In this document: in pieces, positions 2,449 to 63,019 of the stretch | Layout: each line of letters starts with the position of its first letter | Numbering within the stretch: position 1 is the stretch's first letter | Source: Haplodiscus bocki | Lineage: Eukaryota | DNA: 64,000 nt | Reading direction: 5' to 3' | NCBI GenBank assembly: GCA_965655095.1 | Contig: OZ296651.1 | Span: 49,104,001 to 49,168,000, forward strand | Program-made: the position numbers and the translations under genes | The notes under the pieces: model-generated | The model's database searches: none | Told to the model about the DNA's origin: nothing | Seen by the model: only the letters and a program-made list of their open reading frames with translations

Positions 2449-4581
2449 TCATTAGGAAATTGAAACACACCATTTCCGGTACTCAGCAGAATCTCTAGGG
2501 GACGAGTAGTTGAATTACACAGAATAATTACACACTGGATGGACCAAAAGGATTGCTGGCAAGGAAGCGCTGCAGAAAAAGCAACTTGAACAATTGTTTG
2601 CAACAAAGCGTGAAAGCATGAACAATTTTTATAGTCTGGAGAAGCAGTGATTTTAGGAATAATTTAACATCAATTTACACCATTTGTAAGTTTGTAACGA
2701 AGGGGCAAAATCGACCGTAAAACCCTTGCTCCGCTCGACTCGCAAAACTTGCGAGAAAAATACTCCCAGCACACGAATCAACACATCTTCCCGGTTTTCA
2801 AACCACAAGTTGAGTGGGCGGGAGCAAAATGATTATTTCAAAAAAGTGAACGAATAAATCGTGCTGGCCAATAAGAGTTGTGAAAATGATAGAGTAAAAA
2901 TAGAAGTGTGCAAATTCAGAAAATGTAAATTTAAGTGACTGATTTAAGAACATATTAATCAAATACTACATGCAACTCTACTTCCTTTCACCTATCTCTA
3001 TTTACTTGCCAGAGAAACAAGTAATTCTTGGAAAGAAATTTCAACAAAATGGAACAAGAATTTTAGTAGAAAGTTCATTTCACCGCTGAGCCGGAGAGAC
3101 ACGAATCTAATCGCAAAAGAGAGCAAAGAGTACTGAAAAGCACATCCTATAGCACTTAAGCTCATCAGTTCAAGGCCTCAAAAATTTATCAAATAACAAT
3201 GCAAAAAGGCCAATTTTTCTAGCTCTTACTAGAAAATAACCAAATACTTCTAGACCGTTTTGTAAGCCTTCCGCTCATATATGATAGAGGGCTCTTCGTG
3301 TATTGATCCGGAAAAAAAAGCCGGATGAAAAAAGGTTGAATTATACACTGCTGCACAGACACTAGTACAGACGGTGGAATGAGAAAAAATCAGGAAAAAA
3401 CGTGTTCTAACATTCACTTTGAAGAACTCCCAAAAGAAAAACACAGAGCCACAGAAACTCAACAAAAACTGAAGAACACCCTTATCAAGCAAAGTTCAGC
3501 TCTGTTACAATGCGGGCTGTCCCGCTATAGACTTTTCAAGTAATGAAAACGTACGTACATGTAACAATTTTCCCTGTTTTTCCCTATTCGAAAACCATCA
3601 AAAACACTTAAATCGTCTTGGACGCCCTGCTCCGCTTTGAGAACCGATGTGAGGTTATTTACGGTCCAAAACGTCAATCTCGGTCAAATTCCAGAAATCA
3701 GGGGTTTGATGCAAACTTTACTTTCGAAATTCCCACAAAACAGGCAAAGGCTCACAAAACCTATTGAAGGCTCGAGACTGCTTTTGTGTTTCTCGAAATT
3801 TGGGTTCTCCTGAAAGGTCAGCTGCCATTTTTGGAGTTGGAAAAGTAAAATTAGAAGTAGCAATTTTCCTTTGTTTCTCGCTGTTTTAATGTTTGTTTTT
3901 AACAACACGCTGTTTTTAATCCGTTTTTGTTTTTCTTCGGCGAATATTAGAATCGTTGCAAAGTGAGGCAATATCGAATAATGTCGAAAACTATGAAGAA
4001 AAAAGCACTTCTCTACGAAAATTCCTTCGAAAAATCCCAACAAAAGCAAGCAGAGCCACACAAAAACTCAGCATAAACCTCAGAGCTCCTCTTTTCTCAC
4101 TGCTGAAGCAAAAAAGCTCTACTGAATCCTTAGTTGTAGCGTCATAACTCTTTGTTGTTAGCAAAATAGAAATAAAAGTAGCAGTTTTCCATGTTGAGGC
4201 AAAATATTAAAGTATTCAAATGCTTTTGGAAGTCTTGAAAAGTTACAACACTTGGAAGCGGTTCGTTCCATCTTCATGAAACAACAAAGCAATCTGCTCA
4301 ACACCGGTATCACCTGACTGACTCTTTCGAAAATGACAACTTTTCGAAATCCAAGGTTTTTATTGACAAAAACACTCTTCAAAAATTTTATCATAAAAAA
4401 CTGCAAAAACCTCCAAAATCTTGGAGATCATATCTACAGGCGCAACTGAACGTTTTAATGCCAATTTTTTTGAAATATTCAAAGAAAATTCCGGAATCCC
4501 GCAAAAAACCTCGGAGCGTGTCGAATAAAATTTCCTGCCACCAACCAAACCAGTTTGTAGAAAACTTTGATTGACTATTCA

Positions 4582-4779
4582 NNNNNNNNNNNNNNNNNNN
4601 NNNNNNNNNNNNNNNNNNNNNNNNNNNNNNNNNNNNNNNNNNNNNNNNNNNNNNNNNNNNNNNNNNNNNNNNNNNNNNNNNNNNNNNNNNNNNNNNNNNN
4701 NNNNNNNNNNNNNNNNNNNNNNNNNNNNNNNNNNNNNNNNNNNNNNNNNNNNNNNNNNNNNNNNNNNNNNNNNNNNNNN
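4582..4779. other. Run of N (assembly gap or masked block, 198 nt)
   Basis: Directly visible. Confidence 0.99.
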
Positions 4780-6099
4780 CATAAGTTTGACTGCGCGCTC
4801 TTTGCTAGTGTGTAAATTGATCGCGTGGGACACCCACGAAAAAAAATAAAACCCACCCGTAAAACACACCGCTACACGAGCTGACTCGTTTGAAAATTGC
4901 TGCAGCAGTTAAGTTAACGAATAGATTCTAATGAGCTTCTACTATCAAAGCACCAATGTACTTTCGCAGTGATATTGTCTCAATAAATGTAAAGGCGCAA
5001 AGATGTTTGATTGGGCTTCAGTATTGGCACTCAAGAACAAGAAGCGAGCCTCTGATCCTGCAAAACAGTCTCAGTCCTCCAGCTAGCAACGGTAGTCGTT
5101 CGCCGAAACACTTCAAGACCTCTCTACGATGCAGAAATTTTTATTTCCTAAAAAATTTTGTAACAAACATTTCCTGAAAAACAAAATCGAAACATGCATT
5201 GACGCGAAGTAGTAAGAGAATTTATTTGAAGAGGGTCCACTGGGCCAACAGATAAAACCGATGATCTTAGTTTCCAATAAGTTCAACCAGTATGGAAAAA
5301 ATACAGAATCTTCAACGCGTGCTAGGTCAGGCTAAACAACCTTACGAAAGGCTGAGCAAAACGAGATTGGTTAAAAAAATCGAAACTTGCGATGAACGGA
5401 TTAAATTCATATTTTGCAACACAATTTCGCCTGGCGGAAACATTCTTCAGCAGGAAAAACTTTATGTGAAATATTATCAAACAATAACCAGCACGAACAC
5501 TCGTAGCCAATGGGCTTCAGGTAGCTACTGGGTTCGAGGTACTACAGTGAAGTAGTAGAATGGAAATCAAAACTTGATAGGTGAGTTCTTGACATTCAGA
5601 TTGTTTTCGCAAAAAAACCATTCAGCGGTAAAAATTCAAAAAATGTAATTCTACGAAAAAAAGCAGCTTGTAATTGGTAAAAGCTTTGCATGCAAAGCAT
5701 CTCAAAACAAATGTCCAGTATCATCCCAGATTGGAAGAAACGGGTAAAGTATAAAAATTGAAGAACTACTCACTAACTCAAGCTAAAGAACAAAAAGTTT
5801 CAGCCATTTTCTCGGAAAAGTTTTCCCTACCGGAAACAGGCTCAGAGTCATGAGCCTCTCAGAAGAGTTCCGAGAAGTTTCACGTTCTTTGCAAAATGGA
5901 AAGAAAAATCAAAAAAAATACAAATCGAAAAACCGCAAAAAGGAGAACGCTAAAAGCTCGAAGCCGACAGAAAAGGAGCAAAACTGAATCACATCAGATT
6001 CCCGATTCTTCAAGTACTGGAAAAATTTTTGGTCTCCACAACCTTCTCAGCGTAAATTATGAGAAGGATACAATTCACCTCTCCGGGAATTGATAATCG

Positions 6100-7950
6100 T
6101 AGCATTACTATTCTTCGTCCTGATATAATACGAAAACAATCATCAACTCAGTACGCAGGCCATTTCCTCCGCTCGTTTGCCCAATCTGATTCTTTAAGTA
6201 AGTAGCTTCTCGCTTGAGTACATCATCATCCCACCTAACTTCCATGGTGTACTTGTTAGTCACAATAGACGAGATTCGCACAAAAGATCTACGTTCGAAA
6301 CCCTCCACCACCAGACTTTTTCAAACGTCTTTCGGGTTATTATCAACTTCTACGAGGAAAACTTCATCTCTTTTACTTAAAGTATTTTCGGCTTCACGAA
6401 GATTTTTAACGCAAAATCATCTCAATTAAGAACTTTTTCCGAGCACCATTGAGTACTCTCGTTGAGTTTTGGATTTCTGAAGAATCCAGAAGAATTTGGA
6501 AACATTATTATAAAAAAAATTTTAATGAAAAATTTTTGACTTCACTCGAACGACAGGCTGGACATTTTCCATCATTTTTTTCGACATCTTAATTTGCAGA
6601 CGAGCGTTGGCTGAAAACATCATAAGTCATGTCTTCCGCAATGACTTACTTGAAGACCGAAAAAAACACTAAGCGAAAATTATGAAAGTGGATGTTCTCA
6701 TCAACCTCTAAATCGACAATCTTCTACTTGTAGAAGCTTATTCGATAAAGTTATAAATCTTTCGGATATTTGGATTATAAAAAAGACAGAAATTGATAAT
6801 GTCAAAACTGTGAGTAGTAATGATCGTTCTCGATTCGAAACACAATGTTCGTCAAAACTAGCAGCTTGTTTTCAACCACCGAAAAGTCACTTCGCATATT
6901 TCTACTTATAAAGGGTTATTCTATGATATTGTTCACTTCTTTCTCTAGTTTCAAAAACAGATTGGTCGAAAATGTCAAGAAGTGCTAATGAAAAAATCAC
7001 TATCGTGTTGCAAAATCAATTTTTGCCAACACTACCTAACACATATCTCCCACGAAGGTTTCAATCATCAACTCTGACTGTACAAAGCTCGTTGGGAATC
7101 ATTTCATTGGTTTAGCTCCTGGCATCAGAATCCTGACAGATTGTACGAGTCGAAAAGATATACTGGCATTCAGTTTTCACGATACTTCTACGAAACTACC
7201 GGTTTCAATTCTCCCATCATGGTGCCCGCAGACACCGTTTTGGTAATGGAAAGTCATTCAACACTCAAATTTTCTGTTGTTTTCACTAGCAGTGTATTCA
7301 TGAAGACCATAACTTCTAAGATATGCTTTAGTTGTGACTACTCCAGATAATTATACATGCTTCTCCCAAGCGACAATTGCAATTTCTCCTATCAAGGTGT
7401 CAATCAATATTATTCTCTTCGTGAAACGGCATCAAGAAAAAAAACATTATTTTTCAAGTATCATCCTTCTGACGATGACCACATTGGCCCAAGTATTCGA
7501 GAAAAACAGAATTGCCAATTAATATTTTTGATTCCAACACAATTTCTTCTAAACGCCGGTGTTGATTTCAACCAAGGTCTCTATCTGCCATTTCCATTTC
7601 ACTTTTGAAGGACGTACTCTGACGTTATACTTTTCAATTTTGCTATTTGGTATCCGGAAACTGCTAGGCCAAAAATGCCGAAAAGAGCCATTATCAAGGG
7701 CGACCGTTCCCTATTTTCGAGTCAGGTCGCACCAGGAATTCGTCTCAATTTCTTTGATTAGGATTCTTCGGCCGCTTTCTCATTTGTAGAAGGGCAATAT
7801 TCATATATTTCATTCACTTTCTTTCCTTGTATTGAAACACTGGTTGACAGAAAAAGCGAATTGTAATTAGTAGCCAGTGTTTCCGATATTCCAACTTCTC
7901 AAACTTATCGCATTGATCTCTTCGATCAATGTCTCAGTAGACGGTCGCCC
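6100..7950 (-). mobile_element. Probable decayed Penelope-like element (RT plus GIY-YIG)
   Basis: Ordered degenerate minus-strand motifs: DKGNG-like (~7700), 'FLDAVS' (~7425-7440; SLDV.SL), 'AGTMMG' (~7215-7235; G.AMG), 'GRYVL' (~7020; RYVDD-like), 'LREAENTLSKRDE' (~6370-6400; IGET.R.L..R..E) and 'KREATYL' (~6200). All are heavily mutated. Confidence 0.4.
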
Positions 7951-28915: not shown

Positions 28916-28935
28916 AATAGAATAGAATAGAATAG
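28916..28935 (-). repeat. LINE 3' tail microsatellite (CTATT)4
   Basis: Plus strand (AATAG)4, 3 nt from the poly(A) signal. Confidence 0.9.
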
Positions 28936-28938
28936 AGT

Positions 28939-28944
28939 TTTATT
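28939..28944 (-). promoter_or_regulatory. Polyadenylation signal AATAAA of the LINE
   Basis: TTTATT on the plus strand, 24 nt downstream of the final ORF2 stop. Confidence 0.7.
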
Positions 28945-28968
28945 GTATCAGTACAAACGACCAATCAA

Positions 28969-31521
28969 CTAAAAATAAAAGTTTCTCAAACTCCTTGCAG
29001 GGAAAATATTTGTCAACATGGCTTTCTGTGTATAGGGAGCTTTTGGCAACCTATTCCGAAGTTTATTCGTGGCGTAGTCACATCGCTTAGGCAGTATCTC
29101 ATGCAGAATGTGGCTTTCGTCAGAGGTCAATTTCCGCATAAGTTGAGAGTCCTTCTGAGCAATTAGGTCCTTCATTGGTGTATAAGTTGGTATGATATTC
29201 AGCCGCACACACCTTCTTTGCAACTTGTCCAGTATCTCCAGCAGTCCTTTTGAGCAGCCACCCCAGACCACGCAACAGTAGCTTAATTTTGAAACAATTA
29301 AACTCTAGTAGATTACAACAAGATCTTTTTGTGGATAACCCATGTGTTTCAATTTGTTCAGCAGGTAAATATCACCAGAAATTCTTTTTTGTAGCGATTT
29401 GACGTGATTCTGAAATGTCAGCCTGTCATCAAATACGACGCCCAAAATGCAGTTTTCATTGGAAGTGGCAATGGTACTGGCAGCAGGGCTGACATTAGTA
29501 TACTGCAAAACCAAGCTTTTGGTTTTCTGCTGGTTAAGTATGAAGTTATGGTCCTGACACCAATGGTGAATATGGGAGAGCACCTCATCCGAGAAATCCT
29601 TGCCTTGTTTTCCACCACAAACGGCATTCGCATCATCAGCGTACTTTATTGTTCTGCAATATTGCATCTCAAATGGTGGAACACTCAAATCGGCATAGCC
29701 AACATTGAAGCACACTGGTCCCAAAACAGTGCCCTGAGGCACACCGCAATTAATCTGGATGATTTCAGAAGTGTCATTCTGATTGCTGACAAATTGTTTT
29801 CGCCCATGAAGGAAAGAAGATACCAAGTTGCACACTGCAATGGGAATGCCCGGAATTTTACGCATCTGCTGTAGCACAAAATGGTGGGGAATCCTGTCGA
29901 AGGCTTTGCTCAGGTCCACCGACATAATCCTGGCATAATCGCAGCCATTGGCCTCAAGAACACGACACTCATGAAGTATTCGGAGGAGCGCATACTCAGT
30001 GGAGCTTTGCTGCCTGAATCCAAACTGTAGAGGTTCCAGCCATTTATTGTATGCTCTTTTGATATACTTGGTGTATATCAACCGTTCAAAATGTCTTGCC
30101 AGGATCGGCGTAACCGATATCGGGCGCAAATCGTCTAAAGAGGTCACTTTGCTCTTTTTTGGCAGTGCTCGGATTTTTGCTATTTTGAACAAATCAGGAA
30201 ACATAGCTTGGCGCAAACACAGATTATAGATATGCATCATTGGAAGGGCCAACACGTGAGCGTTAGAGCGGAAAACCCAGTAGGGAAGACCATCATGTCC
30301 GACAGCAGACTTCTTGAGATTGAGTAGCGAGTAATAGACTTCATGAAGAGTAAACTCCAGTAATTCGTTGCTTTGAACCATTGTAGGACTGACGTAATTG
30401 TCAACAGTGGAGATGCTGGCAAAGTGTTTGTTGATGTCATTGGAATCGAAAAGACTTGTTTGGGTTTCCTTCGGTTTTCCACGCTGTTCATTGATGATAT
30501 TCCACCACTTTCTGGAACCGCGATCTCCACGGTTTCTGCTGATATTGTTTCTAATCATTTCGGTAATTTGCTTGGTGATGCTTTCCGCCCTGCGAAAATT
30601 GCGCTTCCGGAAAAGCTTGTAACGCTTTTTCAGCAAAAATTTGACGAGGGGACTGATGTAAAAGGGGTCTTTTGTGCTCAGTTTGACAGTTCTAATGGGG
30701 CAGAATTGATCGATCAAGATATTTAGATCATCAAATAATTGCGATAGGGCCACATTGGGATCCTCGATCTGATCTATATAGCTAAAATCACAAATGTCCA
30801 TGGCCCTGTTAAACGAATCTTGGTTTCGGGGTCGCTGGTCTCTAAACGAGACAAGAGATTTAGCTACGGGCAGGCTAACCCTCGGGCTGGCAATTATCGC
30901 AAGATGATCGCTTTTTAAGAGTGTTTTGAAGGAGCTTCCATCGTACTGGGCTGAACTACAATAGACATGGTCCAATTGATGGCCACCCCTTGTTGATCCA
31001 TGGTACAAGTCCGTTAGACCAAAGTCTTCAGCAACACATGAAAAATCAAAATCATTGAAATCACCGCATATGATTATTATGGCGTCGCCATAAACTGATA
31101 GGAGCTGCACGAGTGTATCAGAGATATAGGTGGCATATTCAGACTGACGACCAATCTTCGGGGGGTAGTAAAGCACCGCAAACAGAACTGTTGAAACAGC
31201 GACATGCTTAAGCCAGAGAACTTCATACCTGTCTTTTGAGGGTACATGTAATTGTTCCAGATCAACAGAGTTCTTATAGAAGGCAGCAACGCCACCGCCT
31301 TTACTTTTGGTCGATGAGCAATTGCTTCTGTCATGCCTGCACAGCGAATAGTTCGGAATATACAATAATGAGGAATCGAAATCTGGGGTCAGCCAAGTTT
31401 CTGTGAGAAACACAATATCAATTCTTTCGTTAACCAGATCACATCTCAACCTCTGTATTGCCTCTCGCTTTTTTATCGATCGAACATTGAGTAACATTAG
31501 TTTCGGCAGCGCCAAGTCTAG
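28969..31521 (-). CDS. LINE ORF2: APE endonuclease plus reverse transcriptase, with one premature TAG at 29305-29307
   Basis: APE motifs LLNVRS, FLTETWL, GGGVA, YYPP, GDFN, LDHVY, SDH. RT motifs RPIS, QFGFR, DLSKAFD, GVPQGTVLGP, KYADD, LGVVFD. The same frame continues past the TAG as SLIVSKLSYCCVVWGG...RRCVR to the stop at 28969. Confidence 0.95.
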
Positions 31522-31524
31522 TCA
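31518..31524 (-). promoter_or_regulatory. Putative stop-codon readthrough site UGA-CUAG at the ORF1/ORF2 junction
   Basis: Minus strand reads CAA ATC TGA CTA GAC TTG GCG CTG CCG AAA CTA ATG. ORF2 is in frame with ORF1. Confidence 0.7.
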
Positions 31525-32316
31525 GATTTGGTGCCAAGTGTCGTCAATTTTCTGCTCAAGATGCAAGTTGCGAATTCGCAGGAGCTTTTTGTCGGTGCCA
31601 GCCTCAATCAGTTCTTTCCTACGCTTGAGGGCAACCTGTTCCATTTTGGATTCTTCAAAAGTGAGCTCATTTGAAACAAACAATTTTGTACCGTAACTTT
31701 TCAGTTTGCCGAGGGAAACAAATATTAGCCTTTTGTCCCAGGGATTTTGCACTGAGAACACCAGTGGTCGTGGTTTATTAGGCGTATCATTGCTCTTGCC
31801 TAATCGCCTCACATCAGTAACCTGGCAAGTGACATTGATGTGCTTTAGGAGGGCATCTACTGCACTCTTGTCACGTTCCAAACGTTCACTTTGGGATTGA
31901 ACATCCGCTGGCTCAGGCAGTCCTCTTATTCTTATACCACGTTCTTGATGCGGTGGCTTTTGTGGTGGTGCAGACACTTTTTGGGGTCTAGGCATCTCCA
32001 AATTACCGTCGCTAGTCAGATCTTTCAGCGTTGAGACAATAGTCTTTATTTCTAGTACTTCGGTTTCAATTTTCTTAATCGTGTCAACTTTTGGATTCAA
32101 ATTATCGTCTTTGCAAATGTCGCAGATGAAGAGAATGTTTTCTGAATCTAGAAAGGCATAGATCTCACTTGGAAGTCGTGTACAGGTCAGATGATACCAC
32201 CCAAGACAACCACAGCATTGAATCCACTTTCCATTCTTCGCATTCCCAGTTTTCTTGCAGGCACAGCAGTCTTCTCCAGCTGACGTCGAGTCTCCCCGCA
32301 ATCCTCGAGAAACCAT
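31522..32316 (-). CDS. LINE ORF1 (264 aa): N-terminal PHD finger, short coiled coil, RRM/CTD-like C-terminal region
   Basis: C-x2-C...WIQC-x2-C-x2-WYH-x2-C...FIC-x2-C is a C4HC3 PHD. 'IRIRGLPE', 'RRLGK..PRPLV' and 'FVSNELT.EE...RKEL' are typical of CR1/L2-type ORF1p. Confidence 0.92.
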   Translation of the reverse strand: MVSRGLRGDSTSAGEDCCACKKTGNAKNGKWIQCCGCLGWYHLTCTRLPSEIYAFLDSENILFICDICKDDNLNPKVDTIKKIETEVLEIKTIVSTLKDLTSDGNLEMPRPQKVSAPPQKPPHQERGIRIRGLPEPADVQSQSERLERDKSAVDALLKHINVTCQVTDVRRLGKSNDTPNKPRPLVFSVQNPWDKRLIFVSLGKLKSYGTKLFVSNELTFEESKMEQVALKRRKELIEAGTDKKLLRIRNLHLEQKIDDTWHQI

Positions 32317-32377
32317 TCAATCTATTTAATAACTTTATCACAACAATTAGGCTATAATTTTCTAACTCGATTATGAT

Positions 32378-32412
32378 GGCCATTTTCGTTCAGGAGTTCA
32401 CGTTAAAAATGA
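32378..32412 (-). promoter_or_regulatory. Putative internal Pol II promoter of the LINE (Inr TCATTT plus YY1-like AAAATGGCC at about +25 to +33)
   Basis: TCATTT (32412-32407) matches Inr consensus TCAKTY exactly at the boundary with the microsatellite. AAAATGGCC (32386-32378) matches the YY1 core. Confidence 0.5.
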
Positions 32413-32439
32413 TAGAATAGAATAGAATAGAATAGAATA
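32412..32439 (-). repeat. 5'-flanking microsatellite, about (TTCTA)5
   Basis: Plus strand ATAG(AATAG)4AATA. Confidence 0.9.
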
Positions 32440-32950
32440 TCAAAGTCAACGATAGACAAAAACATCAAGAAAGGAGATGTGAAAAAGGCTTAGCTGTCCG
32501 AGAGGCAATTTTACTTTTCTTCAAAGGCTTTTGTTGAGAGGTGGATGAGAGGCAAAGAATTGTCGAAGTAATTTTAACAATTCTCATTTGGTTAAACTTT
32601 CCCCGAGAGTTCAGCAAGGATAATTTCAAAAACATAAAAAAGGTCAGTGCCCTCTTGATCAACAACTTGTCGCATGATATGATGCTGGCTCTCGACGTTT
32701 CTCAACGATCACTACTTGAATGGTTGCTGACCAGTGCAAAACTCTCTAGTCATCATGGAGAAAAGCAGGCTTTCTTTGGCCCTCAAGTAGGAGAAAGCGA
32801 AAACACCTTGAAAAAATACTGCACTATGCTTTTCAAGAACACTGTTTCTTTCTAGGTACCCAAGATGCGACGCCACTTGTTTCATAGAAGAGTTAGAACA
32901 GAAACCAGAAGTTGCTCTACGACACAGCCTAATTGTTATGATAAACTTCA
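32440..32950 (+). mobile_element. Right part of the old Gypsy pol relic (RT-RNase H connection)
   Basis: ORF 32541-32855 'NFKNIKK...LSHD..LALDVS...GEKQAFF...ESE' resembles AF..IK..L.H.D..L..DAS...GE.P.AF.S..L..E. Confidence 0.4.
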
Positions 32951-35949: not shown

Positions 35950-37700
35950 TAATGTAATTTGGAGTTCCTGGGATTTGATTTTAATTTGACCGTATTATGG
36001 ATAGTGGAGGTGTGGTTGAAGACAAATGTAATGACTACAAAGCTAACGAGGATGTTGATAGCGATTGGTACCCTCCCTTCTCTCAGGTCATCAATCTTGT
36101 TTCGACTGCTGCCAGTGTGAGACGCTCATCCGACGCCGCTTCAGTGGAAAGGAAAAAAGTGATGTGTATGTTGATGTTGTTGTTGGACAGTCTTATGATG
36201 GACAACCAGGTGTGTGAATTTGATGTGTCGTCATTGGTTATGTTATCGGACGAAGTCAGGAATGACCCAATATCCGTGTTGACCAGTATCCAGGCGCACC
36301 TCTGTTATTCAACAAATAATTTAGGTTATGAGATGGCTAACCCTCCGTCTAGGATTGACATGGAGTCTTGTTCTGGTGTGGAAGCCACTGCCTCCTGTGT
36401 CAATGTAGAGGAGTTGCAACTCAAAGCACAATCTGTTGTTTTGCCTTCGTGCCGCTTCGTTTCCCACTTCTCGAGGACGTCTGGGTTGGTTTTTTGGAAC
36501 ACCAGTACAGTGAATTCATCGTCGTGGAAAGTCAGTGGTTGTAATTGGGTTGTTTGTGGGTCCATTACGTTCGAACAGCACTTTTTGATAATTTTGTTTG
36601 TGAAAAACATAGTCGGCGGCTCTCAATACGAATTTCGTGGTACGTCTGAGTATCTGCTTGTGTTGGATCACGCAACTGTTTCAGCATCGCCGACTGGAGT
36701 TTCTTTGCAGCTAAAAAAAACATGTCCGTATCAGAACCGAAGAACTGCCATTGAAAAAGTCTATCGCTCCCTGTAGAAGCAAAAGTGTGCTCAGCGATGA
36801 TGAGACTAGGGCCGAGCTATGCAACATATTTCGTGAAGGTAAAAACTGCTTCTGTATTGTGTTGGTATGTGTATGTTATGGATGACTCAGACTTTTACTG
36901 ATGTTTAGACGCCTTTGATTTGGATAAACTTCCGCTACCTTTATCGAACAGTCAGCGCCCAAAAGTTTGAGGGTGGTTCCTGGCGTTGTGGAACGCGCCC
37001 ATTTTCGTAGTCAGAGCACTCTGAAAAGTTAATAATACCGGTGCCTGATGCTGTTTTTGTTTGGTTGGTTTATTTAGAAGTTATTTTTTTAAAGTTAACC
37101 TTGCTACTGGACCGTCTGGAGACTCGATATCATGTTAATCGTTTTGAAACTGACGCTGAGTAAATTGTTGAGACTGAGGACGTGGTTGCTCCGTCACCAT
37201 AAAAGGGTTGGAAGAAGAGGCGCCGTAAGGGTGGGGGGGCATTGGTCGGACTGACGCTGAGCCTAGATAGCACGAGTTTATTGCACCAGTGAAACACAAC
37301 GTGTCGTGGAATATACCAGAAACTATCGTGAGTCTCTATCATTTTTTCTAAAGGTTTTTTAATGATGGTTGGGTTAGTTTTTAGATGTTTGTGTGTATTG
37401 TTTCATCGTTTGCTTTTCATAGTTGTTGTTTTTTATGTTAACAGGCTATCATCTGTACAGTGTCGTATCCCCGTCCTATTCGTGCTCTAGTGTTCTGGAT
37501 CGGGACGTGTGGGATGTACTAACTCAACCTTGAGGATCCTGGTGATAAGGTGTATGCTTTTATGAAAACTTGAGATTGTGTGCATTTGAAGCGCACCTGT
37601 GTTTTGATTGGAAGCGTGTCTCTAGAATATCCAGTTGGTGAACTCCGTATTCTGTCTCGTATTCAGAAATGTGAACCATCTTCTGTTAGGATTCGTTGTG
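35950..37700 (-). pseudogene. env-like ORF remnant
   Basis: Located between pol and the 3' LTR. Basic site plus small/hydrophobic run 'LRRLFFQPFYGDGATTSSVSTIY' (~37170-37230), a Cys-containing C-terminal part ('KKCCS', 'DCALSC') and a Ser/Leu-rich terminal segment. Interrupted by stops. Confidence 0.45.
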
Positions 37701-39789
37701 TTTTTTGAACGGTGGCTCGGCACTACTACGTCAAAGTGTGGATTGTAACCTTGGTGATGGAAAGCCACTTGTTTTTTATGAAGATTTTACGCCCAACGGG
37801 TTCTGGACGTCTTATGGTAGAGTGGACATTTTTGTGTTTGGCAAACTGGACCCTTTCACGCTTGTGGAGTAATTGGTGTGGCGTTTGAAAAGCGTTAACC
37901 ATGACAATTCGTTGCTCTCCTCCACTTATTTGCGTCGTGGTATTATGCGCGACTCTGTCGAGTTTGCTGACTTGAGACATGTTGTATCGGAGATTACACC
38001 ACTATGTTATACTATACAGTTGTTTGTGTGTAATACATGTAGCATTGATTTACATGTTCGAACCGTCCAAAACTTTGGCGTGGATAGTGTATTTCACTAT
38101 GACAGCTCGATGCCCGTTCATCTTGACTTTTTTATGATGATTTACAACGACTAATAAATCAGCTTTAATTTATGGTTTCTAGCGAGTAGTGTTTTTGAAA
38201 TTCGTTACTATTGCGAACTTTACATTTTTTAAAGCTGATCTCGTAAAAGTGTACGAGCTTCACACTTTGCCGCTGAGTTTTGAATGGGAGAGATATACCA
38301 GGCCAGCAGCGGAAGATTCTGACATCCAATCGATGCTCTTTCTTGAGTGTTCTTTCTTCTCAGAGTGTTTTTTGTGCAACCAAGGTTTGGGCAACAAAAT
38401 GAAAACAAGGATTGCCAAGAACGAACGATTTCCGAAGAATGCACATCAGTTTATCTTTGGTTTAGTCGATCAAAAATTACAGATTACTTCTGCTAACAGT
38501 GTGATCGGGAAGCGCAAGCCATGTTTTTGTCCTGAAACAATGCATAGTAACAACGATTGTACATCTTCGAGTTGTTCGTTTAACTTGTGGACAAAGTGAA
38601 AAAACATGCGTAGCTGACGGTTTCCGGAAGCGAAACTCCCATGAATGAGTTTAAGACTTTTGTGCCTACTCAACATTCTCGTCAAGTGTCTTCTAAACTT
38701 CGATGCCAGTTTCCATATTGTTGTGGCTCATTGTTTGGATGTCAATTCCTTCCCCGAGCGGAAGAGTTTGCTGAATTTTTTTCAATTTTGTGCGTTTTGT
38801 GTTCGTCAAATTGATTTACTTGTTGTTGAAGTTGGCGTTACTCCTGTGGCGTTTCCTCTTACTTTTTCTAAATCTATTCTTCGTTTTCTCAAGTCAAATA
38901 TTTTATCATTTGGCGTGAGCATTAGGCATTTGTTTTCCAGTGGCACTTTGACTTTGGTGCACACGATTATGTCAGAGGCTGAAGCGTTCATAGGCAATTA
39001 CGACTATAGGCTTTAGGGTCCATTTAATGTTGGACGCCGGTTTGGAATCTGGCGTAATATGGTGGATTGTCAGATTCAAATTCGCACTCAACGTTTTCTT
39101 GACCGCATGGCAAGATTAGAAGCGAGTAATGCCCGCCATCGTGAACTCTCAGACGTAGGACAATCATCTCAAAGTGCTTCTGCCATGAGACCCTCAAGAC
39201 GTGGGGGTAGGAGTGGACCAATTGAAACTGTATAGTAAAATGTGTTGACGTAGAGTTGCCTTCTACTTTTCAGGTGAGTCTTTTTCCAAATGAAGCCAAA
39301 GGGACGTTTAATGTTAGTGAAACACTTTGTGGCAGAAAGTCGTCAGAAACATGTTGTGAAAGTGCAGTTGTCAAACGAACATTGGTCTGAGAAAAATGAT
39401 AGTTTTGGCAGCAAATCTGCGTCCCATGAGGTGTCTTCATTGGCTGTTGGCCCCAGTGAAAAAGATTTTATGACCAAAGGTATGGCCAATCGCGATAAAG
39501 TGCTTGCCAATTTGCGGGTTCGAAGGCTTCCACGTTCACCCAAATTTCAAGAGGGCAGACGTGGTTTTCCACCAATAGCGGTTGTGCATCTATTCGAGGT
39601 TCGCTCTTGTGTTTTTATTCGTTTTATATGTCCTTTGGTTCCAATGTTTGTAAATTGGTTGATTTGGAATTATATTTTTAGTCTGTTTTCTTTGTCGTAC
39701 ATAACATTGGACTTGAGTTATTCTAGTCAAGACCGATGAACTTAGTTTTCACTTATTTTGTTTTGAGTCTAGTGTAGGTCTGTCGGACG

Positions 39790-42700
39790 TGGTCTAGGTT
39801 GTTTTAATGTCTGTAGTCGTCTGTGTAATCCAGTTTCGGATTAATGCAGAAGGAGTGTTTCCCCCTCTTCTAGGTCTGTGTTCTGATGTTTTGGTGTCTT
39901 GCACCGTCGTTTGTTTTCGGTAGTCTTGGCTTGTCATTGGGTTCTCGTTCTGGCGGTTGTCAGTGTGATTGTCTGATTCGGGCACTGCTTCTGCAAATTT
40001 GGGACTGATTTCAAATATATCTGGTTTGATTAGGAAGTGCTCTGGAACCTTTCCGTAAGTGAAGCTCATCGCATGGTTGTCCTTGGATTTTCTGTTTCTT
40101 GTTTTTGAGGATTTTGAACTTATCTTGTTCAATGCGTATTAATGCGTCCTGTTTTACTTTTCCGATTGTGAAGTGTGAAAGGTTATGAGTTGGTGGTGGT
40201 TGCGTTAATTTTGATTTCAAGTTTTCGTTTTGTTGGATTTTGTTTTTTTTTCATTTCATTCCTTTTCGATATTTCTTCTTCGGTTTCTGGAGTTTCATCA
40301 GGCAAGCAGATGGCTAGTTCTTCTTCTGCTATGTCCAATGAGTCGACGTTCACTTCTATTGCTTGTGTTTGGATGTCAACTCAGATTTTGAGCTGAACTC
40401 ACTCATAGAGGAAGGTTTCAAATCTTGATAGGTTATCTGCTACTGTTTTCTTGGAGCCTGTTACCTAGACTATTTGAAAACGGAAATGGAGGTCGTAGTT
40501 GCAAGCGTTCCATTGTGCTGGTGGAATCGCTTTTGTCCTAAAGAATCTCATTACTCATTTATTAACTGTGAACACAAGTGTTGATTTTTTTTGCTTCCCA
40601 CAAGATATGACTGTATTCTAAGAATGCGTGGTAAAATGCTAGGATTTATTTGCAGTGCAAGCACATCTTTAGTTGTGGTTGTGTAAAAACTCGCGAGCCA
40701 GAAGCTTTGGTGGCGAAGTATATCCTTTTGGAACAGAGTTTTTGTTTATGGTTGTGTTCTGTCACGGGCGCGTAAACTGCGGAGGGGAAACTGGCGTCTG
40801 TCACTACGATGACTTTTTGTTGGGCAGTGGTTGTTTTAGCGCTATCCCTTGTGCTGTGTCTAATGCTTTGTTTCTCTGGGAATATTTCTGGATTACTTCT
40901 TGGGTTATCCTTACTTTGTTTTCCGATTTCAGTGGGGTGGTAAAAGTATTAGTATGTCGGACAGGCGTAATATGTAGTTTCTGTACTTCTTAGCAAAGCC
41001 TTTGAATCGTTGGATTGCTTTGTCAGATTTTGGCACTTCGACTTTTTTTGAGAAATTTTGGATTTTGTGCGTTTGTGGGGCTATGCCTTCAGCTGTGATT
41101 GTTCTACGTAAAAATTCCAGCTCTTGACCGCCAAAATGGCGCTTGTAGATTATGAGTTTGAGGCTTGGCTTTCTTATGCATTCGAAAACAGCTTTCATGT
41201 TCTAAATGAATTCTTTGCTGCTATCCGTATCTCGTCTTTTTACTGGGCGCATTGGTTCGTTTTTTTTACTGGGTCTGGGTATTCTGGCATACCTCGAGAA
41301 TGCCAACAGGGATCGGCTAAGGCCTTGTGCTAGCCTTTTGTCCGCAAACGTCCGTCTGGCGAAGATAAAGGCTAGTAGCTCTATGAATCTTTGATCCGCC
41401 ATTTGTGGATAGTGGTAGACCTGTGAGCAGTCTAGTTTCCAGGATAGTTGTTTACCTGCGAGATGTTATGCTGAGTTTAAAAGTGTACATTTTGGGTGAT
41501 TGTTAATGACATAATCATCCGAGATGAGGTTGTTGATTCTCTTGAGGTCTACTTGCAGCCAAAGTTTTCCGTTCGGTTTCCGGTTTGGTGAATATTGAGT
41601 TTGGTGATTTGGGGAATGGTGAGACGGTTTCGATGCCATGTTTGTGCATTACTGCTAATTCGGCTATGAAATCCTTTTTAGGTTGAAAGGCATAGACAAA
41701 TTTTGGCTGTAGACTGCTTTTTCGTTCTTGGGTGAGAGTTTAGCCTAAAACTCTTGATTGAGTCTAATGTCCAGTCTGTGGCGGGCGAAAATGTTATGGT
41801 ATTATACGAGTTTTTGTTCGACTACGTGTTTCTTCTACGTTTAAAAGAGGGTCTGTCTAGTTGATGTTATCGAAAATTCGTTGTTTTGGATGTTGATCGC
41901 GTTATGGGTTCAGATGTTCTAGTTCCTATAATTCCTATTGTTCGTCTAAGATGCGTCCATTTTTTGGTGTTATTTTGTCACTGTTTCTTGGGTTTTTAGG
42001 AATAGAAAACTAGAACCTTTCTGTGGTTGAGTCTTTTGTTTTATCTTGGGTAACTCATTAAAATATATGGTGGTTTGATCACAGTTGTCTTTTTGTAGGA
42101 CGCCTAAAGCTGCGGTATCAAGTGTTTTGAGTTGTTTCGTCTGTTTTGGTGATTACACTTGAAAGTTGGCAAGGGTGGTGCCTGTTTTTATTGAGTAGGT
42201 GTAGTCATTTGGGTGGCATATCTTGGTAAAAATTTCTTTCCTTCGTACCGTTGATAACGAATTGTCAACTTTTGTCTTATGATACTTCGTGGGAGTGATG
42301 ATGTCTGTAGTTTGATTTTAGCGTTTCGGGTTTACATAGGCTAATATTCTTGCGGTTGTCTTGGGTGGTATTGTTAGTGTCTATTGTATTCCATGTTTTG
42401 TGGTTTGTACGTTATTGTTTTTTTCCGTCTTCGTTGCCCTTGTTAGGTGTGCAAAATGGAATTAATCCCTGGTTTTTGTCAATTACTGCGTTGTTGTGGC
42501 GTAAAAAGGATATTTCTGTTTCTGAGTTTTTCATGTTGATCAGAGTTCCTTGATTATGAATTGTCTTTGGAATCGGGTTTCGCCGATTTCAAAGATGACG
42601 TGTAAGCTTGTGAGGGTTTTTTTGAGTTAGCCGTTTGCTACTTGGATATGAAATGGGGGCGAAGGTGCTTCGGTTTGGTGGTGGGCCAAACTGTTTTGCT

Positions 42701-42900
42701 TATATTGTTTTGTTTCTTGTCGAGAACAATTATTAGTGCTCGCGATTCCACCAGTGCGTTGACTGTAAGTTCAGCGTACTCGATGGGTGTGTCTAGTATT
42801 TTTCTATGTTTCTTAAAAGGTATCATTGTTGATATTGGTATGAATTTTCTGTTGTTTGTGAGATCTGTTTGAACTTGTTTTTGTATTGCATGTCCTAAAA
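39790..42900 (-). pseudogene. pol: Gypsy pol remnant (PR-RT-RH; integrase core apparently deleted)
   Basis: PR 'VNALVESRA' (ALVDSGA-like). RT 'MADQRFIELLAFIFARRTFADKRLAQGLSRS' and 'KAVFECIRK.SLKL...HFG..LEFLRRTI..GIAPQ'. 'IRIEQD..ILKN...IQGQPCDE' joins directly to the pol C-terminal tail 'RPRRGG...'. Confidence 0.85.
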
Positions 42901-43559
42901 ACATCTTGTCTTTGTCGAAAGGTCGGACTGTGTCATATTGGGCGTTGTTTTGGTTGTGTAGTTCTAACGTTTGTTCTGTTTTCTTTGTTTTGTCTAGGGT
43001 AAGGCCAGGTTACATATTCTTGACATCAGTGTGTGTGTATGTCTTCAGACATTGTTTTTGCATGAGTTATGATATTTTGAGTAGTGATGTTTTGTTGTTG
43101 GGTGTGTTTTTTTGTTTTTTTTTGAGTTTTGAAAATTTTTCATTTTTTGTTATTAGAATTGGCGTGGGTGTGTTATTTTCCTGTTCCGTTTTTTTGGTTG
43201 GGAGTAACATAGTGGGTTCTTTGTTTTTTTTGACATCCTTGATTAAAATGGCTTTTCTGTAGTTCTCGCCTTTTGTACAATATGGGTCTGATGTTACGTT
43301 CAATAAGCGTTCTGAGTATTGTTCCCTATATGTGCGATCATTGTTGACTTCTCTATCTACGTCTGAGGGTGTTAATTGTCTGCGTTCATCTGCGTGTTGG
43401 TCGTTAGTTTTCCATGTTCGAGGAGGTTCATGGTTGGTAAGGGTCGTTTTGTTGTCATGTATATTAGTCTCCTTTCTGGCGTAGTTTTGCACGTTGCGAA
43501 TTGTTTTGTAGTTCATGTGGTATGATATGAAAAGTGCCTTTTCGCAGTGGCGTTGCAAA

Positions 43560-44620
43560 TCAATTGAGGCTGTGTCGTGGCCTTGTGTTTTCGTGTCTGT
43601 TATAAATGTGTTTGAAGGATCGGAGACCTATTTTGCCTGATGTGTACCATTTCTCGAAATCGTAAACATGTCGTAGTTAGTTTAAAGATTCGACGTCTTC
43701 TTCTGTTTGTTGTGTTGGCATTCCGGGCTTAGTGTCTGTGGTAGTGTCGTGTTTTTGTTGTCTTTTTTGTCCTTTGTTGGTGGGGGTTTGTTTTTACCGG
43801 TAGGGTTTCATCAACATGTTTCAGCTTCGTGATTGTTTTTTTGCAGATTTCACATCTTGGTACCTTGGGTTCAACGCTTGTTGTTTGGTTCCCTTTTTTT
43901 GTTGTTGTTCTCTTTTTAGTTTCCAACGTTCTTCTTCAAGGTACCCTTCTTTCCGTCAACTGTAGCAGTTTCCCATCTTTCTGTGCATTGCTTCCTTGTG
44001 TTTGGGTTGAGCTTGGTTGATGGTTGCAAATGTTGTTTCGTCGAGTGTTACTAGTCCGTTGAGTTCCAGTTCTTTTTCTTGGTCATTGAGGATTCTTTCA
44101 TTTTTTCCGTTGTCAAAGTTTGCTAGGTTGATTATTCCCTTGGGGTGGGGTGGCATTATTGCGTGGAAGGATTGGTTTTTTTCCCGGGGCTTCCGTTCCA
44201 AAAGCGGCTTTTGCGAGTCGTTTTAGATCTTTGAGGAATTCATGTCAGTTTTGTTTTGTCGGGTGGAACATCAACGTTTACCATTAATTTCTTGCAGATG
44301 CCATTGCTTTGGTATCAACAAACCTGCCTTGATATATTTTTAGGACATCGTTGATGATTTCGTTTGTGGGTATGGTCTATTAGCGATAGTTTGTAACGCA
44401 TCCCTTCTCTTTAGCGATAGAAACGAGTTATTCTCTTCTCCTTCAGTAAGATGCAGGTACATTTTGAGGCTTGGGTTGAAAAAGTCTTCGAAGAAATCGA
44501 TCTTAATGTTTTTACATCGAATACCGGTAAGATGGCCGTGTGTCCTTTGGGCGTTTTTGATGTAGAGCAATGGCTGGTTGTTCGTTGATGCTCCGGCCTG
44601 GCTACTGTTTGTGCTAGCTC
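43560..44620 (-). pseudogene. gag: Gypsy gag remnant
   Basis: 'FFEDFFNPSLKMYLHLTEGE..NSFLSL.RRDALQT' and 'MPPHPKGIINLANFDNG...EKELELNGL', followed by a 'CEICKK' knuckle remnant. Confidence 0.7.
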
Positions 44621-50537: not shown

Positions 50538-51575
50538 CAAGAAGACGGCCGGCTGTCAGCGGCATATTTGGCGCCGTCCCACTTTTGTAAAGAGGGTTTT
50601 CAAAAAGATGAAAGCCTTTTTTATCTCGGAAAAACACTCTTTCTTGGTCATGGTTTCTAAGTTTTCAAACGTTGAAAGTTCTCTGAAGCTTTGCAAAAAA
50701 ACCTCAAAATTAAGCGGGAAAGAACTTTTAAGAGATAAAACCATTTTAAACGCATTTTACAGCAACGTTGCCACCTTTAGCGATTTTGAAATTATTTCAA
50801 GTTTTTTCCCAAAACCCAATCTTTTTTGACAAAAGACTCAAATTTTGTACGTTTTGAGCAATCTTAGTTTTTAACCTCAGCAACATTGGCAGTTCCGGCA
50901 TTCTTGGCAACCGCGGTAATCTCGGCAAACTTGGTAATCTCTGCATTATTGGCAATCTTGGCAACGTTGGCACTCTTGGCATTCTTGGCATTCTTGTACT
51001 TTTTAGCGCTTTTGGCATTCTTTTGCTTCTTGTCATGCTTGGAATTTTTGGCATTTCCGGTATTTTTGGCATTCTTGGCATTTTTGGCAAAATTGGCATT
51101 CGTGGCCTTTTTGGCATTTTTGGCATTTTTGGGATTCTCGGAATTTTTGGGATTCTTGGCTTTTTTGGCATTATGGGCAGTTTTGACATTTTTGGCATTT
51201 TGTTATTCTTGGAATTTCTGGCATGCTTAGCGTTTTCGGCAGTTTCGGTATTTTGAGCAATTTTGGCATTCTCAGCAGTTTTGGCACTTTTGGTATTTCT
51301 GGCATTCTTAGCATTTTTGGCATTTTTGACATTTTTGGCATTCTTGACTTGATTGGAATCTTTGGCATTCTTGGTAAATTTATCTTTTTAGGCAATAATG
51401 GCATTTTTGGCAAACTTGGCACTTTTGGCATTTTCGGCATTTTTTGCAAAAAATTTCAAGCGAGCCAACACCGTTCTCGCGGGAGCTTAATTGGCAAACA
51501 TCGGGTGAAAAAACTCACCCATTGGAGTAGAAAATTTTGTTTTCCATATTCTGAAGAATTTGACGAAAAATAGCA
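50538..51575 (-). mobile_element. Non-autonomous Helitron/Helentron-like element, copy B, carrying an expanded 9-bp minisatellite
   Basis: Both arms match copy A (1940-2448) in reverse orientation. The centre is replaced by ~560 bp of tandem repeat. Confidence 0.65.
50886..51446. repeat. 9-bp minisatellite, consensus GGCATT(C/T)TT, about 62 units
   Basis: Directly visible. Produces periodic ORFs (MPK/MPR)n, (GIF/GIL)n and (AFL)n. Confidence 0.95.
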
Positions 51576-55417: not shown

Positions 55418-55617
55418 NNNNNNNNNNNNNNNNNNNNNNNNNNNNNNNNNNNNNNNNNNNNNNNNNNNNNNNNNNNNNNNNNNNNNNNNNNNNNNNNNNN
55501 NNNNNNNNNNNNNNNNNNNNNNNNNNNNNNNNNNNNNNNNNNNNNNNNNNNNNNNNNNNNNNNNNNNNNNNNNNNNNNNNNNNNNNNNNNNNNNNNNNNN
55601 NNNNNNNNNNNNNNNNN
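55418..55617. other. Run of N (200 nt)
   Basis: Directly visible. Confidence 0.99.
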
Positions 55618-62814: not shown

Positions 62815-63019
62815 NNNNNNNNNNNNNNNNNNNNNNNNNNNNNNNNNNNNNNNNNNNNNNNNNNNNNNNNNNNNNNNNNNNNNNNNNNNNNNNNNNNNNN
62901 NNNNNNNNNNNNNNNNNNNNNNNNNNNNNNNNNNNNNNNNNNNNNNNNNNNNNNNNNNNNNNNNNNNNNNNNNNNNNNNNNNNNNNNNNNNNNNNNNNNN
63001 NNNNNNNNNNNNNNNNNNN
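62815..63019. other. Run of N (205 nt)
   Basis: Directly visible. Confidence 0.99.

What the first reader, a model, noticed from the sequence alone, without database searches (positions are those of the whole stretch)
28969..32316. LINE with ORF1 and ORF2 in one frame joined by a UGA-CUAG readthrough signal: a predicted gag-pol-like ORF1-ORF2 fusion
Seen: from the ORF1 ATG (32316) to the final stop (28969) there is a single 3348-nt frame of 1116 codons. ORF1 ends ...CAA ATC TGA and continues CTA GAC TTG GCG CTG CCG AAA CTA ATG TTA CTC AAT into the endonuclease with no spacer and no frame change. The first ORF2 AUG is only 3 residues before the conserved Asn of APE strand 1 (PKL-M-LL-N-VRS), so initiating there would clip the first beta strand. 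Established: UGA-CUAG is the best-characterised leaky stop context in animals (AQP4, LDHB, MDH1, OPRK1, MAPK10; UGA-CUA in Sindbis virus). Characterised LINEs instead make ORF2 by termination-reinitiation (L1; UAAUG coupling in SART1). Inference: this element makes abundant PHD-ORF1p plus a minority ~1115-aa PHD-ORF1-APE-RT fusion by programmed readthrough, a retrovirus-like stoichiometry control that would also tether a chromatin-reader domain to the endonuclease. I cannot confirm from here whether this is already described for the family.
Basis: partly seen in the sequence, partly recalled or inferred. Interest (0 to 1): 0.9.

Follow-up and report, generated by a model that had tools for sequence, protein, structure and literature searches.

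The report
LINE family with conserved leaky ORF1 stop
A jumping gene (LINE), probably in a stony-coral genome, has its two genes in one reading frame separated only by a UGA stop in a known "leaky" context; ten deeply diverged relatives I could check keep this layout, which suggests the second protein is made as a fusion by reading through the stop, a strategy I could not find described for LINEs.

Summary
The junction is real. ORF1 (32316..31522, minus strand) ends in TGA followed by CTAG. The endonuclease/reverse-transcriptase ORF continues in the same frame.

Sibling copies at 97-99% identity (L002, L007) have the whole frame open apart from the junction TGA.

The decisive result is comparative:
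- I read nine lineages in DNA. Their ORF1 C-terminal domains are only 32-52% identical to each other.
- The ORF1 stop is TGA in 9/9. The next base is C in 9/9, the next three are CTA in 8/9, and CTAG in 4/9.
- ORF2 is in the ORF1 frame in 9/9, with no further stop before the endonuclease.
- Six of the nine have no ATG before the catalytic Asn.
- Flanking bases are saturated (mean pairwise identity 0.30 and 0.28, against 0.86 on stop+4).
- Four more lineages are in frame by gene tables or by natural Trp-for-stop copies.
- An outgroup LINE has its own ATG and a different frame.
- No RNA structure follows the stop.

The best reading is programmed UGA readthrough giving a minority ORF1p-ORF2p fusion (confidence about 0.7). 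It is unproven without translation data. I found no paper describing this for non-LTR elements.

The parts
28916..32353 (-). Whole LINE copy, about 3.44 kb.
   Evidence: Four copies at different sites (window, L001, L002, L007) share sequence from about 36 nt before the ORF1 ATG to the AATAAA and (CTATT)n tail. The flanks differ.
32317..32353 (-). Short 5' UTR.
   Evidence: Alignment of the four copies gives the 5' boundary.
31522..32316 (-). ORF1, 264 codons plus the TGA stop. It is intact. Domains: PHD finger, coiled coil, and an L1-ORF1p-type RRM plus C-terminal domain.
   Evidence: AlphaFold model pLDDT 87. Foldseek best matches are the human LINE-1 ORF1p trimer and the Pygopus PHD. Profile against PDB.
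32113..32268 (-). PHD finger of ORF1 (residues 17-68), Pygopus/MLL-PHD3-like.
   Evidence: Pfam PF00628, E 8.5e-06. PDB profile hits at 1.6e-10. Foldseek TM 0.78-0.84 to the Pygo PHD.
31528..31935 (-). RRM plus C-terminal domain of ORF1 (residues 128-263).
   Evidence: 2ldy, E 0.0032; 2ykp, 2yko, 2ldy, 2w7a.
31518..31524 (-). ORF1 stop TGA followed by CTAG: the proposed readthrough signal.
   Evidence: Conserved across lineages.
31489..31521 (-). Eleven in-frame codons between the stop and the invariant endonuclease Asn. They include the only early ATG (31497..31495).
   Evidence: The spacer has no stop in any of the nine lineages and varies by whole codons.
28969..31521 (-). ORF2 (endonuclease plus reverse transcriptase), same frame as ORF1. 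In this copy it is broken once by an in-frame stop, with no frameshift.
   Evidence: P0002 is an intact 842-aa ORF2, 97% identical over 99% of the first piece.
30832..31500 (-). AP-endonuclease domain.
   Evidence: Pfam PF03372. Invariant N12, E41, D154, N156, H206 in 21 relatives. Model pLDDT 84.
29509..30162 (-). Reverse-transcriptase domain.
   Evidence: Pfam PF00078, E 1.4e-26.
28916..28968 (-). 3' UTR with AATAAA and the (CTATT)n tail (28916..28936).

Best explanation
The feature is a full-length but defective copy of a young, multi-copy LINE. The host is probably a stony coral.

The element encodes an L1-type ORF1 protein with an N-terminal PHD finger. In the same frame, directly after a single UGA, it encodes an endonuclease/reverse-transcriptase ORF2.

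In the family, most ribosomes terminate at the UGA and make ORF1p. A minority decode the UGA with a near-cognate tRNA, because the stop sits in the termination-weak context UGA-CUA(G). These ribosomes continue and make an ORF1p-ORF2p fusion of about 1115 aa. This sets a low ORF2:ORF1 ratio and ties the enzyme to the ORF1p/RNA particle, as Gag-Pol readthrough does in some retroelements.

Shown: the anatomy, and the conservation of stop type, context and frame. Also shown: most lineages lack an ATG before the endonuclease.

Inferred: that ribosomes actually read through, how often they do so, that the fusion is the active form, and that the coiled coil lets it join ORF1p trimers.
For: - Junction in the window and in three sibling copies: TGA CTAG, same frame.
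- Nine lineages read in DNA have ORF1 C-terminal domains 32-52% identical to each other. These are the window family, L003, L004, L008, L009, L010, L011, and second elements in L002 and L001.
- In those nine: TGA 9/9, +4 C 9/9, CTA 8/9, CTAG 4/9, ORF2 in the ORF1 frame 9/9, and no stop in the 12-20 codons up to the invariant Asn.
- Column shares anchored on the stop (eight lineages) are 8,8,8,8,7,8 of 8 for +1..+6, against 3-6 of 8 at nearly every flanking position. Mean pairwise identity is 0.86 on stop+4, against 0.30 and 0.28 in the flanks. Chance of CTA in at least 7/8 independent sequences is about 4e-12.
- Only three of nine lineages have an ATG in the spacer. In the rest the first in-frame ATG lies after the catalytic Asn, and in four of them after the catalytic Glu as well.
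- Gene tables without DNA show the same frame in two more lineages.
- Natural copies P0301 and P0240 have Trp at the stop position and run on into the endonuclease. P0217 also runs on without a stop.
- None of the 150 best of 733 ORF1 relatives exceeds 476 aa. Apart from those mutated copies (all under 520 aa) the stop is kept, and no full-length fusion protein was found.
- The outgroup P0008 (28% identity) has its own ATG and a different frame from the upstream gene.
- UGA_CUAG is an established readthrough-prone stop signal, 1.5-17% in human genes. CUA selectively raises readthrough, and the +7 G doubles it (PMC9841425).
- Single-ORF LINEs with a PHD finger fused to ORF2 are known, so an N-terminal extension on the endonuclease is tolerated (PMC4120745).
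Against: - There is no translation or protein evidence of any kind.
- The paper read here (PMC9841425) measured the motif in mammalian cells. I saw no measurements for cnidarians.
- One lineage (L004) has CAA rather than CTA after the stop.
- Three lineages, including the window family, do have an ATG just before the endonuclease. By the model, that ATG would cost only one strand residue.
- No stimulatory RNA structure follows the stop (z-scores -1.4 to +2.6).
- In the LTR element Tca2, an in-frame gag-UGA-pol junction did not by itself direct readthrough in a reporter (PMC2194720).
- Human L1 makes ORF2p by an AUG-independent restart (PMC5009743), so a missing ATG alone does not prove readthrough.
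- Most relatives come from unannotated metagenome contigs of unknown host, and several copies are broken.
Confidence: 0.7

Rival explanations
1. Termination followed by restart. Ribosomes release ORF1p at the UGA and then resume on the same RNA at or near the next codons, with or without an ATG, making a separate ORF2p. This is what is proposed for mammalian L1 and shown for SART1.
For: - It is the only mechanism documented for LINEs in the reviews read (PMC5972666; PMC5009743; PMC2241872).
- L1 ORF2 initiation is independent of its ATG.
- The window family, L003 and L011 have an ATG 7-8 codons after the stop.
Against: - A restart does not need the two ORFs to be in one frame, yet 9/9 lineages in DNA and 4 more by other evidence are in frame.
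- CTA is not a near-cognate start codon, yet it is the conserved triplet.
- There is no stop-start overlap and no conserved structure.
- Six lineages have no ATG before the catalytic Asn.
Confidence: 0.17
2. The in-frame stop is decay: a nonsense mutation in what was a single ORF, or a chance arrangement in a dead element.
For: - The window copy is indeed defective, with one more stop in ORF2.
- A few natural copies have a sense codon at the junction.
Against: - The stop is present in every sibling copy read and in four other 264-aa ORF1 variants.
- It is present in all nine diverged lineages, always as TGA and with the same following bases.
- The sense-codon copies are a minority: 1 of 7 in the P0142 cluster.
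Confidence: 0.02
3. UGA is not a stop here. Either the host reads it as a sense codon or selenocysteine, or the conserved bases are a splice signal (branch point or acceptor) for a subgenomic ORF2 mRNA.
For: - TGAC fits a loose branch-point pattern, and CTAG ends in AG (from the sequence; my own knowledge of splice consensus).
Against: - There is exactly one in-frame TGA in about 1116 codons in intact copies, at the domain boundary.
- No SECIS or any other Rfam family reaches threshold in the window.
- Five of nine lineages lack the AG.
- A spliced template would yield intron-less copies, and none was seen.
Confidence: 0.03

Closest known systems
UGA_CUAG readthrough-prone stop signals of animal cellular genes (e.g. 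OPRL1, DUS4L; PMC9841425)
   Same: The same seven bases occur in the window and in three other lineages, and UGA-CUA occurs in eight of nine. It is a short linear context with no need for a downstream structure, and the downstream frame is open.
   Different: In cellular genes the signal adds a short C-terminal extension. Here it would give access to an entire 850-aa enzyme ORF of a mobile element. It has not been measured in cnidarians.
Gag-Pol expression by in-frame stop readthrough in some retroviruses and LTR retrotransposons (PMC5009743; Tca2 gag-UGA-pol, PMC2194720)
   Same: An abundant nucleic-acid-binding first protein and a rare fusion carrying the polymerase. The ratio is set by a leaky stop.
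   Different: This is a non-LTR element with no protease to separate the parts. No pseudoknot or other structure follows the stop. Those systems use a 3' structure or, for Tca2, non-canonical signals.
Bicistronic LINE translation: mammalian L1 (spacer with two in-frame stops, AUG-independent restart) and silkworm SART1 (overlapping stop-start)
   Same: Two ORFs lie on one RNA, and ORF1p has the L1 type of fold.
   Different: Those elements make separate proteins, and a fusion was looked for and not seen in rat L1 (PMC2241872). Here there is a single stop, no overlap, strict frame conservation, and usually no ATG.
Jockey-superfamily LINEs with type IIC ORF1 (PHD + Transposase_22): L2 subgroup 6 and CR1 subgroup 5 of Metcalfe and Casane (PMC4120745)
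   Same: The same ORF1 architecture (PHD, coiled coil, RRM, CTD) upstream of an endonuclease-RT ORF2, and a 3' tail of short tandem repeats.
   Different: I could not place the RT in their phylogeny because no reference sequences were on hand. That paper does not discuss the ORF1/ORF2 junction.
Single-ORF LINEs with an N-terminal PHD finger (L2 subgroup 4, CR1 subgroup 6; PMC4120745)
   Same: A PHD finger is joined to the endonuclease-RT in one polypeptide.
   Different: In those elements the fusion is constitutive. Here a stop is kept, so the fusion would be a minor product.

Membership tests
Non-LTR retrotransposon (LINE) with AP-endonuclease | AP-endonuclease domain with catalytic residues, followed by a reverse-transcriptase domain in one ORF | tested here: met
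   Pfam PF03372 and PF00078. N12, E41, D154, N156 and H206 are invariant in 21 relatives. Model pLDDT 84.
Non-LTR retrotransposon (LINE) with AP-endonuclease | Dispersed copies with common ends, different flanks and no LTRs; 3' tail of simple repeats | tested here: met
   Four copies share the 5' end and the AATAAA-(CTATT)n 3' end, with unrelated flanks. The protein cluster has 99 members.
Non-LTR retrotransposon (LINE) with AP-endonuclease | Target-site duplication flanking the copy | tested here: inconclusive
   No clear duplication at the ends defined. A (CTATT)n run lies 57 nt upstream of the 5' end.
Type IIC ORF1 LINEs (L2 subgroup 6 / CR1 subgroup 5, PMC4120745) | ORF1 with an N-terminal PHD finger followed by an L1-ORF1p-like coiled coil, RRM and CTD | tested here: met
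Type IIC ORF1 LINEs (L2 subgroup 6 / CR1 subgroup 5, PMC4120745) | Placement of the endonuclease-RT within the L2 or CR1 lineage by phylogeny with reference elements | not tested
   No Repbase reference sequences were available. The nearest named proteins are only 24-28% identical (Hydra, a fish).
Programmed stop-codon readthrough (UGA_CUAG type) | UGA followed by CUAG (core CUA) | tested here: met
   Window: TGA CTAG. CTA in 8/9 lineages and CTAG in 4/9. The motif is defined in PMC9841425.
Programmed stop-codon readthrough (UGA_CUAG type) | Downstream frame open and protein-coding, conserved across diverged relatives, with the stop and its context more conserved than the flanks | tested here: met
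Programmed stop-codon readthrough (UGA_CUAG type) | Readthrough product or in-frame ribosome density observed | not testable with these tools
   No expression, footprint or proteome data are on hand.
Termination-reinitiation (SART1 / calicivirus type) | Stop and restart codons overlapping or adjacent, with an ATG or near-cognate start | tested here: not met
   No overlap. Six of nine lineages have no ATG before the catalytic Asn. The conserved CTA is not a near-cognate start.
Termination-reinitiation (SART1 / calicivirus type) | Conserved RNA structure or motif near the junction that holds the ribosome | tested here: not met
   Folding of 120 nt after the stop in eight lineages gives z-scores from -1.4 to +2.6. 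The upstream 30 nt are not conserved.
Retroviral-type readthrough with a 3' pseudoknot | Stable structure a few bases after the stop | tested here: not met
   The folding tool does not predict pseudoknots, so only simple helices were tested.

The most novel reading that the evidence does not exclude
A whole clade of LINEs, deeply diverged and so far seen mainly in unannotated holobiont or metagenome assemblies, one of them a coral, has given up independent initiation of ORF2. It expresses its endonuclease/reverse transcriptase only as an ORF1p-ORF2p fusion through a conserved UGA-CUA(G) readthrough signal. That would be the first Gag-Pol-style recoding in non-LTR retrotransposons. It would also be evidence that this short stop context works as a readthrough signal in early-branching animals.
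Probability: 0.55. Interest if true: 0.85.

Novelty: new variant of a known kind. Interest (0 to 1): 0.78.

Why it matters
How LINEs make a little ORF2p from a bicistronic RNA is a long-standing open question. The documented answers are restart mechanisms that are still poorly understood.

A LINE clade that uses a simple, conserved leaky stop would be a third strategy, convergent with retroviral Gag-Pol. It would give a natural case where the enzyme is physically joined to the RNA-binding protein, which bears on cis-preference. It would also extend the UGA-CUA(G) signal from mammalian genes to cnidarians.

It matters for annotation too. In these elements ORF2 has no start codon of its own in most lineages, so gene callers truncate it. 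Called ORF2 products started 32 to about 100 codons late in L010 and L004.

Tried and rejected
- **Other copies in the window:** none.
- **Rfam on the window:** nothing, so no SECIS or known recoding element.
- **RNA folding after the stop in eight lineages:** not different from shuffles.
- **The search for related loci with broad ORF1 alignments:** A four-sequence alignment found two metagenome loci and nothing in prokaryote genomes or viral contigs.
- **L006 (ORF2 30% identical):** 5'-truncated, so no junction could be read.
- **Two contigs gave gene tables but no DNA**, as did the outgroup.
- **Word-index protein searches with ORF1 or its profile:** almost nothing, and no organism names.
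- **Ten literature searches:** no description of readthrough in non-LTR elements. Two were poorly aimed (68, 69). The SART1 and L1 translation papers are not held.
- **From memory only, unverified:** some plant LINEs were reported with ORF1 and ORF2 in frame across an amber codon. I could not find the paper.
- **Pfam on eight other long ORFs of the window:** nothing.
- **Rejected readings:** private nonsense mutation, recoded UGA or selenocysteine, splice signal. See the rival explanations.
Full report
**1. The observation**

On the minus strand an ATG at 32316 opens a 264-codon ORF that ends in TGA at 31524..31522. The next four bases are CTAG. The same frame then continues to 28969.

Pfam finds a PHD finger in ORF1. 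Downstream it finds an Exo_endo_phos domain and an RVT_1 domain. The first ATG after the stop is the ninth codon, three residues before the endonuclease Asn that is invariant in 21 relatives.

The ORF list shows three ORFs in this one frame. The window copy's ORF2 therefore carries one more in-frame stop, with no frameshift, and this copy is defective. ORF1 is intact.

**2. What the element is**

- **Ends.** Four copies at unrelated sites (window, L001, L002, L007) share sequence from about 36 nt before the ATG to an AATAAA followed by (CTATT)n. This defines a 3.44-kb LINE, 32353..28916.
- **Copy number.** ORF1 and ORF2 products of the family sit in a 90%-identity cluster of 99 proteins. The cluster includes intact 842-aa ORF2s and several 264-aa ORF1 variants that all end at the same residue.
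- **Host.** L007 is 97-99% identical to the window copy. It comes from JGI project Ga0126343, which a preprint names as a Cyphastrea sp. 2 coral metagenome (10.1101/391565). The window is therefore probably stony-coral DNA. Nothing suggests human sequence. The three N runs were left alone.
- **ORF1 protein.** An AlphaFold model of ORF1p has pLDDT 87. It matches the human LINE-1 ORF1p trimer and its RRM-CTD, and its N-terminus matches the Pygopus PHD finger. This is the 'type IIC' ORF1 of Metcalfe and Casane, known from L2 subgroup 6 and CR1 subgroup 5 (PMC4120745).
- **Clade.** I could not place the RT in a reference tree, so the clade name is open.

**3. The comparative test**

I read the ORF1/ORF2 junction in DNA in nine lineages whose ORF1 C-terminal 140 residues are only 32-52% identical to one another (the decayed L001 second element and the sibling copies were not in that matrix). 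The lineages are:
- the window family (four copies)
- L003, L004, L008, L009, L010 and L011
- second, different elements in L002 and in L001

They come from at least six different samples.

| Feature | Result |
|---|---|
| ORF1 stop is TGA | 9/9 |
| Next base is C | 9/9 |
| Next three bases are CTA | 8/9 (CAA in L004) |
| Fourth base after the stop | G in 4, T in 2, A in 2, C in 1 |
| ORF2 in the ORF1 frame | 9/9 |
| Further stop before the invariant Asn | none |
| Codons from stop to Asn | 12, 13, 13, 13, 14, 15, 15, 17, 20, so indels were whole codons |

Sources.

I anchored eight lineages on the stop and counted the share of the commonest base per column. It is 8,8,8,8,7,8 of 8 for positions +1 to +6, and 3-6 of 8 at nearly every position in the 30 bases before and after. 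Mean pairwise identity is 0.86 on stop+4, against 0.30 and 0.28 in the flanks. So this is an island of nucleotide conservation in a saturated linker.

Only three lineages have an ATG in the spacer. In the other six the first in-frame ATG lies beyond the catalytic Asn. In four of those it also lies beyond the catalytic Glu, so an ATG-started product would lack essential residues.

Further evidence on frame and on retention of the stop:
- Two contigs for which only gene tables were returned also have ORF2 in the ORF1 frame.
- Among the 166 ORF1-family proteins held, three run on from ORF1 into the endonuclease. In two of these (P0301, P0240) the stop position is Trp, one transition from TGA.
- P0301 is one of seven proteins in its cluster, and four of the others end at the stop.
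- None of the 150 best of 733 ORF1 relatives is longer than 476 aa, so no full-length fusion was found.
- Among the 120 best ORF2 relatives, those of 1100 aa or more carry no PHD domain.
- As a contrast, the ORF2 of P0008 (28% identical) has its own ATG 24 codons before the Asn and lies in a different frame from the gene upstream.

**4. Mechanism**

UGA_CUAG is an experimentally established readthrough-prone stop signal, with efficiencies of 1.5-17% in human genes. Adding UA after UGA_C selectively raises readthrough, and changing the G halves it (PMC9841425). The conserved bases here are exactly that signal.

Folding 120 nt after the stop in eight lineages shows nothing beyond shuffled controls. 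The signal would therefore be the short linear context alone.

I conclude that the family most likely makes ORF1p by termination and a minority ORF1p-ORF2p fusion by readthrough. Several steps are inference:
- that a fusion protein is actually made
- how efficient readthrough is
- which amino acid is inserted (from general knowledge, Trp, Arg or Cys)
- that the fusion joins ORF1p trimers through the coiled coil

Single-ORF LINEs with a PHD finger fused to ORF2 are known (PMC4120745), so an N-terminal extension is plausible.

**5. Rivals**

- **Restart after termination.** This is what is documented for LINEs (PMC5972666, PMC5009743, PMC2241872). Human L1 does not need its ATG, so the missing ATG alone is not proof. 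But restart does not explain strict frame identity or a conserved CTA.
- **Window family specifically.** The ATG would cost only one residue of strand 1 (model residues 8-12).
- **Decay, recoded UGA or selenocysteine, and a splice signal.** These are rejected for the reasons given under the rival explanations.
- **A caution.** The LTR element Tca2 has an in-frame gag-UGA-pol junction whose flanks did not direct readthrough in a reporter (PMC2194720).

**6. Novelty**

In ten full-text searches and the reviews read, I found frameshifting, restart and 2A peptides described for non-LTR elements, but no readthrough. The ORF1 survey paper does not mention the junction. The library lacks most subscription papers and Repbase reports, so prior mention cannot be excluded. 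I recall, unverified, reports of plant LINEs with an in-frame amber codon between the ORFs. I rate this a new variant of a known kind.

**7. Conduct**

- ORF1 and the ORF2 pieces were searched apart. The step of searching a joined read-through protein was left out.
- **Breaks counted.** Window copy: ORF1 none; ORF2 one stop and no frameshift. L001 copy: at least three frameshifts. L009 copy: at least one stop in ORF2.

Noticed in passing
window 32406-32446: A (CTATT)n run, the same unit as the element's own 3' tail, lies 57 nt upstream of the element's 5' end. It is not part of the element as defined by the other copies. It could be the tail of an older, almost wholly truncated insertion, a preferred microsatellite target, or chance.
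   Followed up: partly
L002 9497-10529 and L001 about 4000-6600: Different, distantly related LINEs of the same ORF1 family (27-29% identical ORF1) lie within a few kb of copies of the window's family in the same assembly. Each has its own TGA-CTA junction, so several lineages coexist in one genome.
   Followed up: yes
Proteins P0301, P0240, P0217: These natural copies have no stop at the ORF1/ORF2 junction. P0301 and P0240 have Trp there, so ORF1 and the endonuclease form one called protein. Whether such constitutive fusions are active or dead copies is unknown, because no DNA could be fetched.
   Followed up: partly
Protein cluster of P0002: The 264-aa ORF1 proteins are filed in the same 90%-identity cluster as the 842-aa ORF2, although the two share no sequence. 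This explains why the ORF1 search returned almost nothing. The cause is unexplained: a clustering artefact or a bridging fusion member.
   Followed up: no
window 50897-51448: A tandem array with a 9-nt unit, about 56 copies at 66% match, overlaps a 133-codon ORF on the minus strand. It is possibly a coding tripeptide repeat.
   Followed up: no
window 36000-44000: Strong strand asymmetry (GC skew up to +0.28, AT skew down to -0.44), with ORFs of 136-259 codons on the plus strand that have no Pfam match.
   Followed up: partly
window 4582-4779, 55418-55617, 62815-63019: Three runs of N of about 200 bases each. They were left as they are.
   Followed up: no
L004, L010 (called genes): Gene callers start ORF2 at the first downstream start codon, 32 to about 100 codons after the ORF1 stop. 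This cuts off the catalytic Asn, and in L004 the Glu as well. Database ORF2 proteins of this clade are therefore systematically N-terminally truncated.
   Followed up: yes
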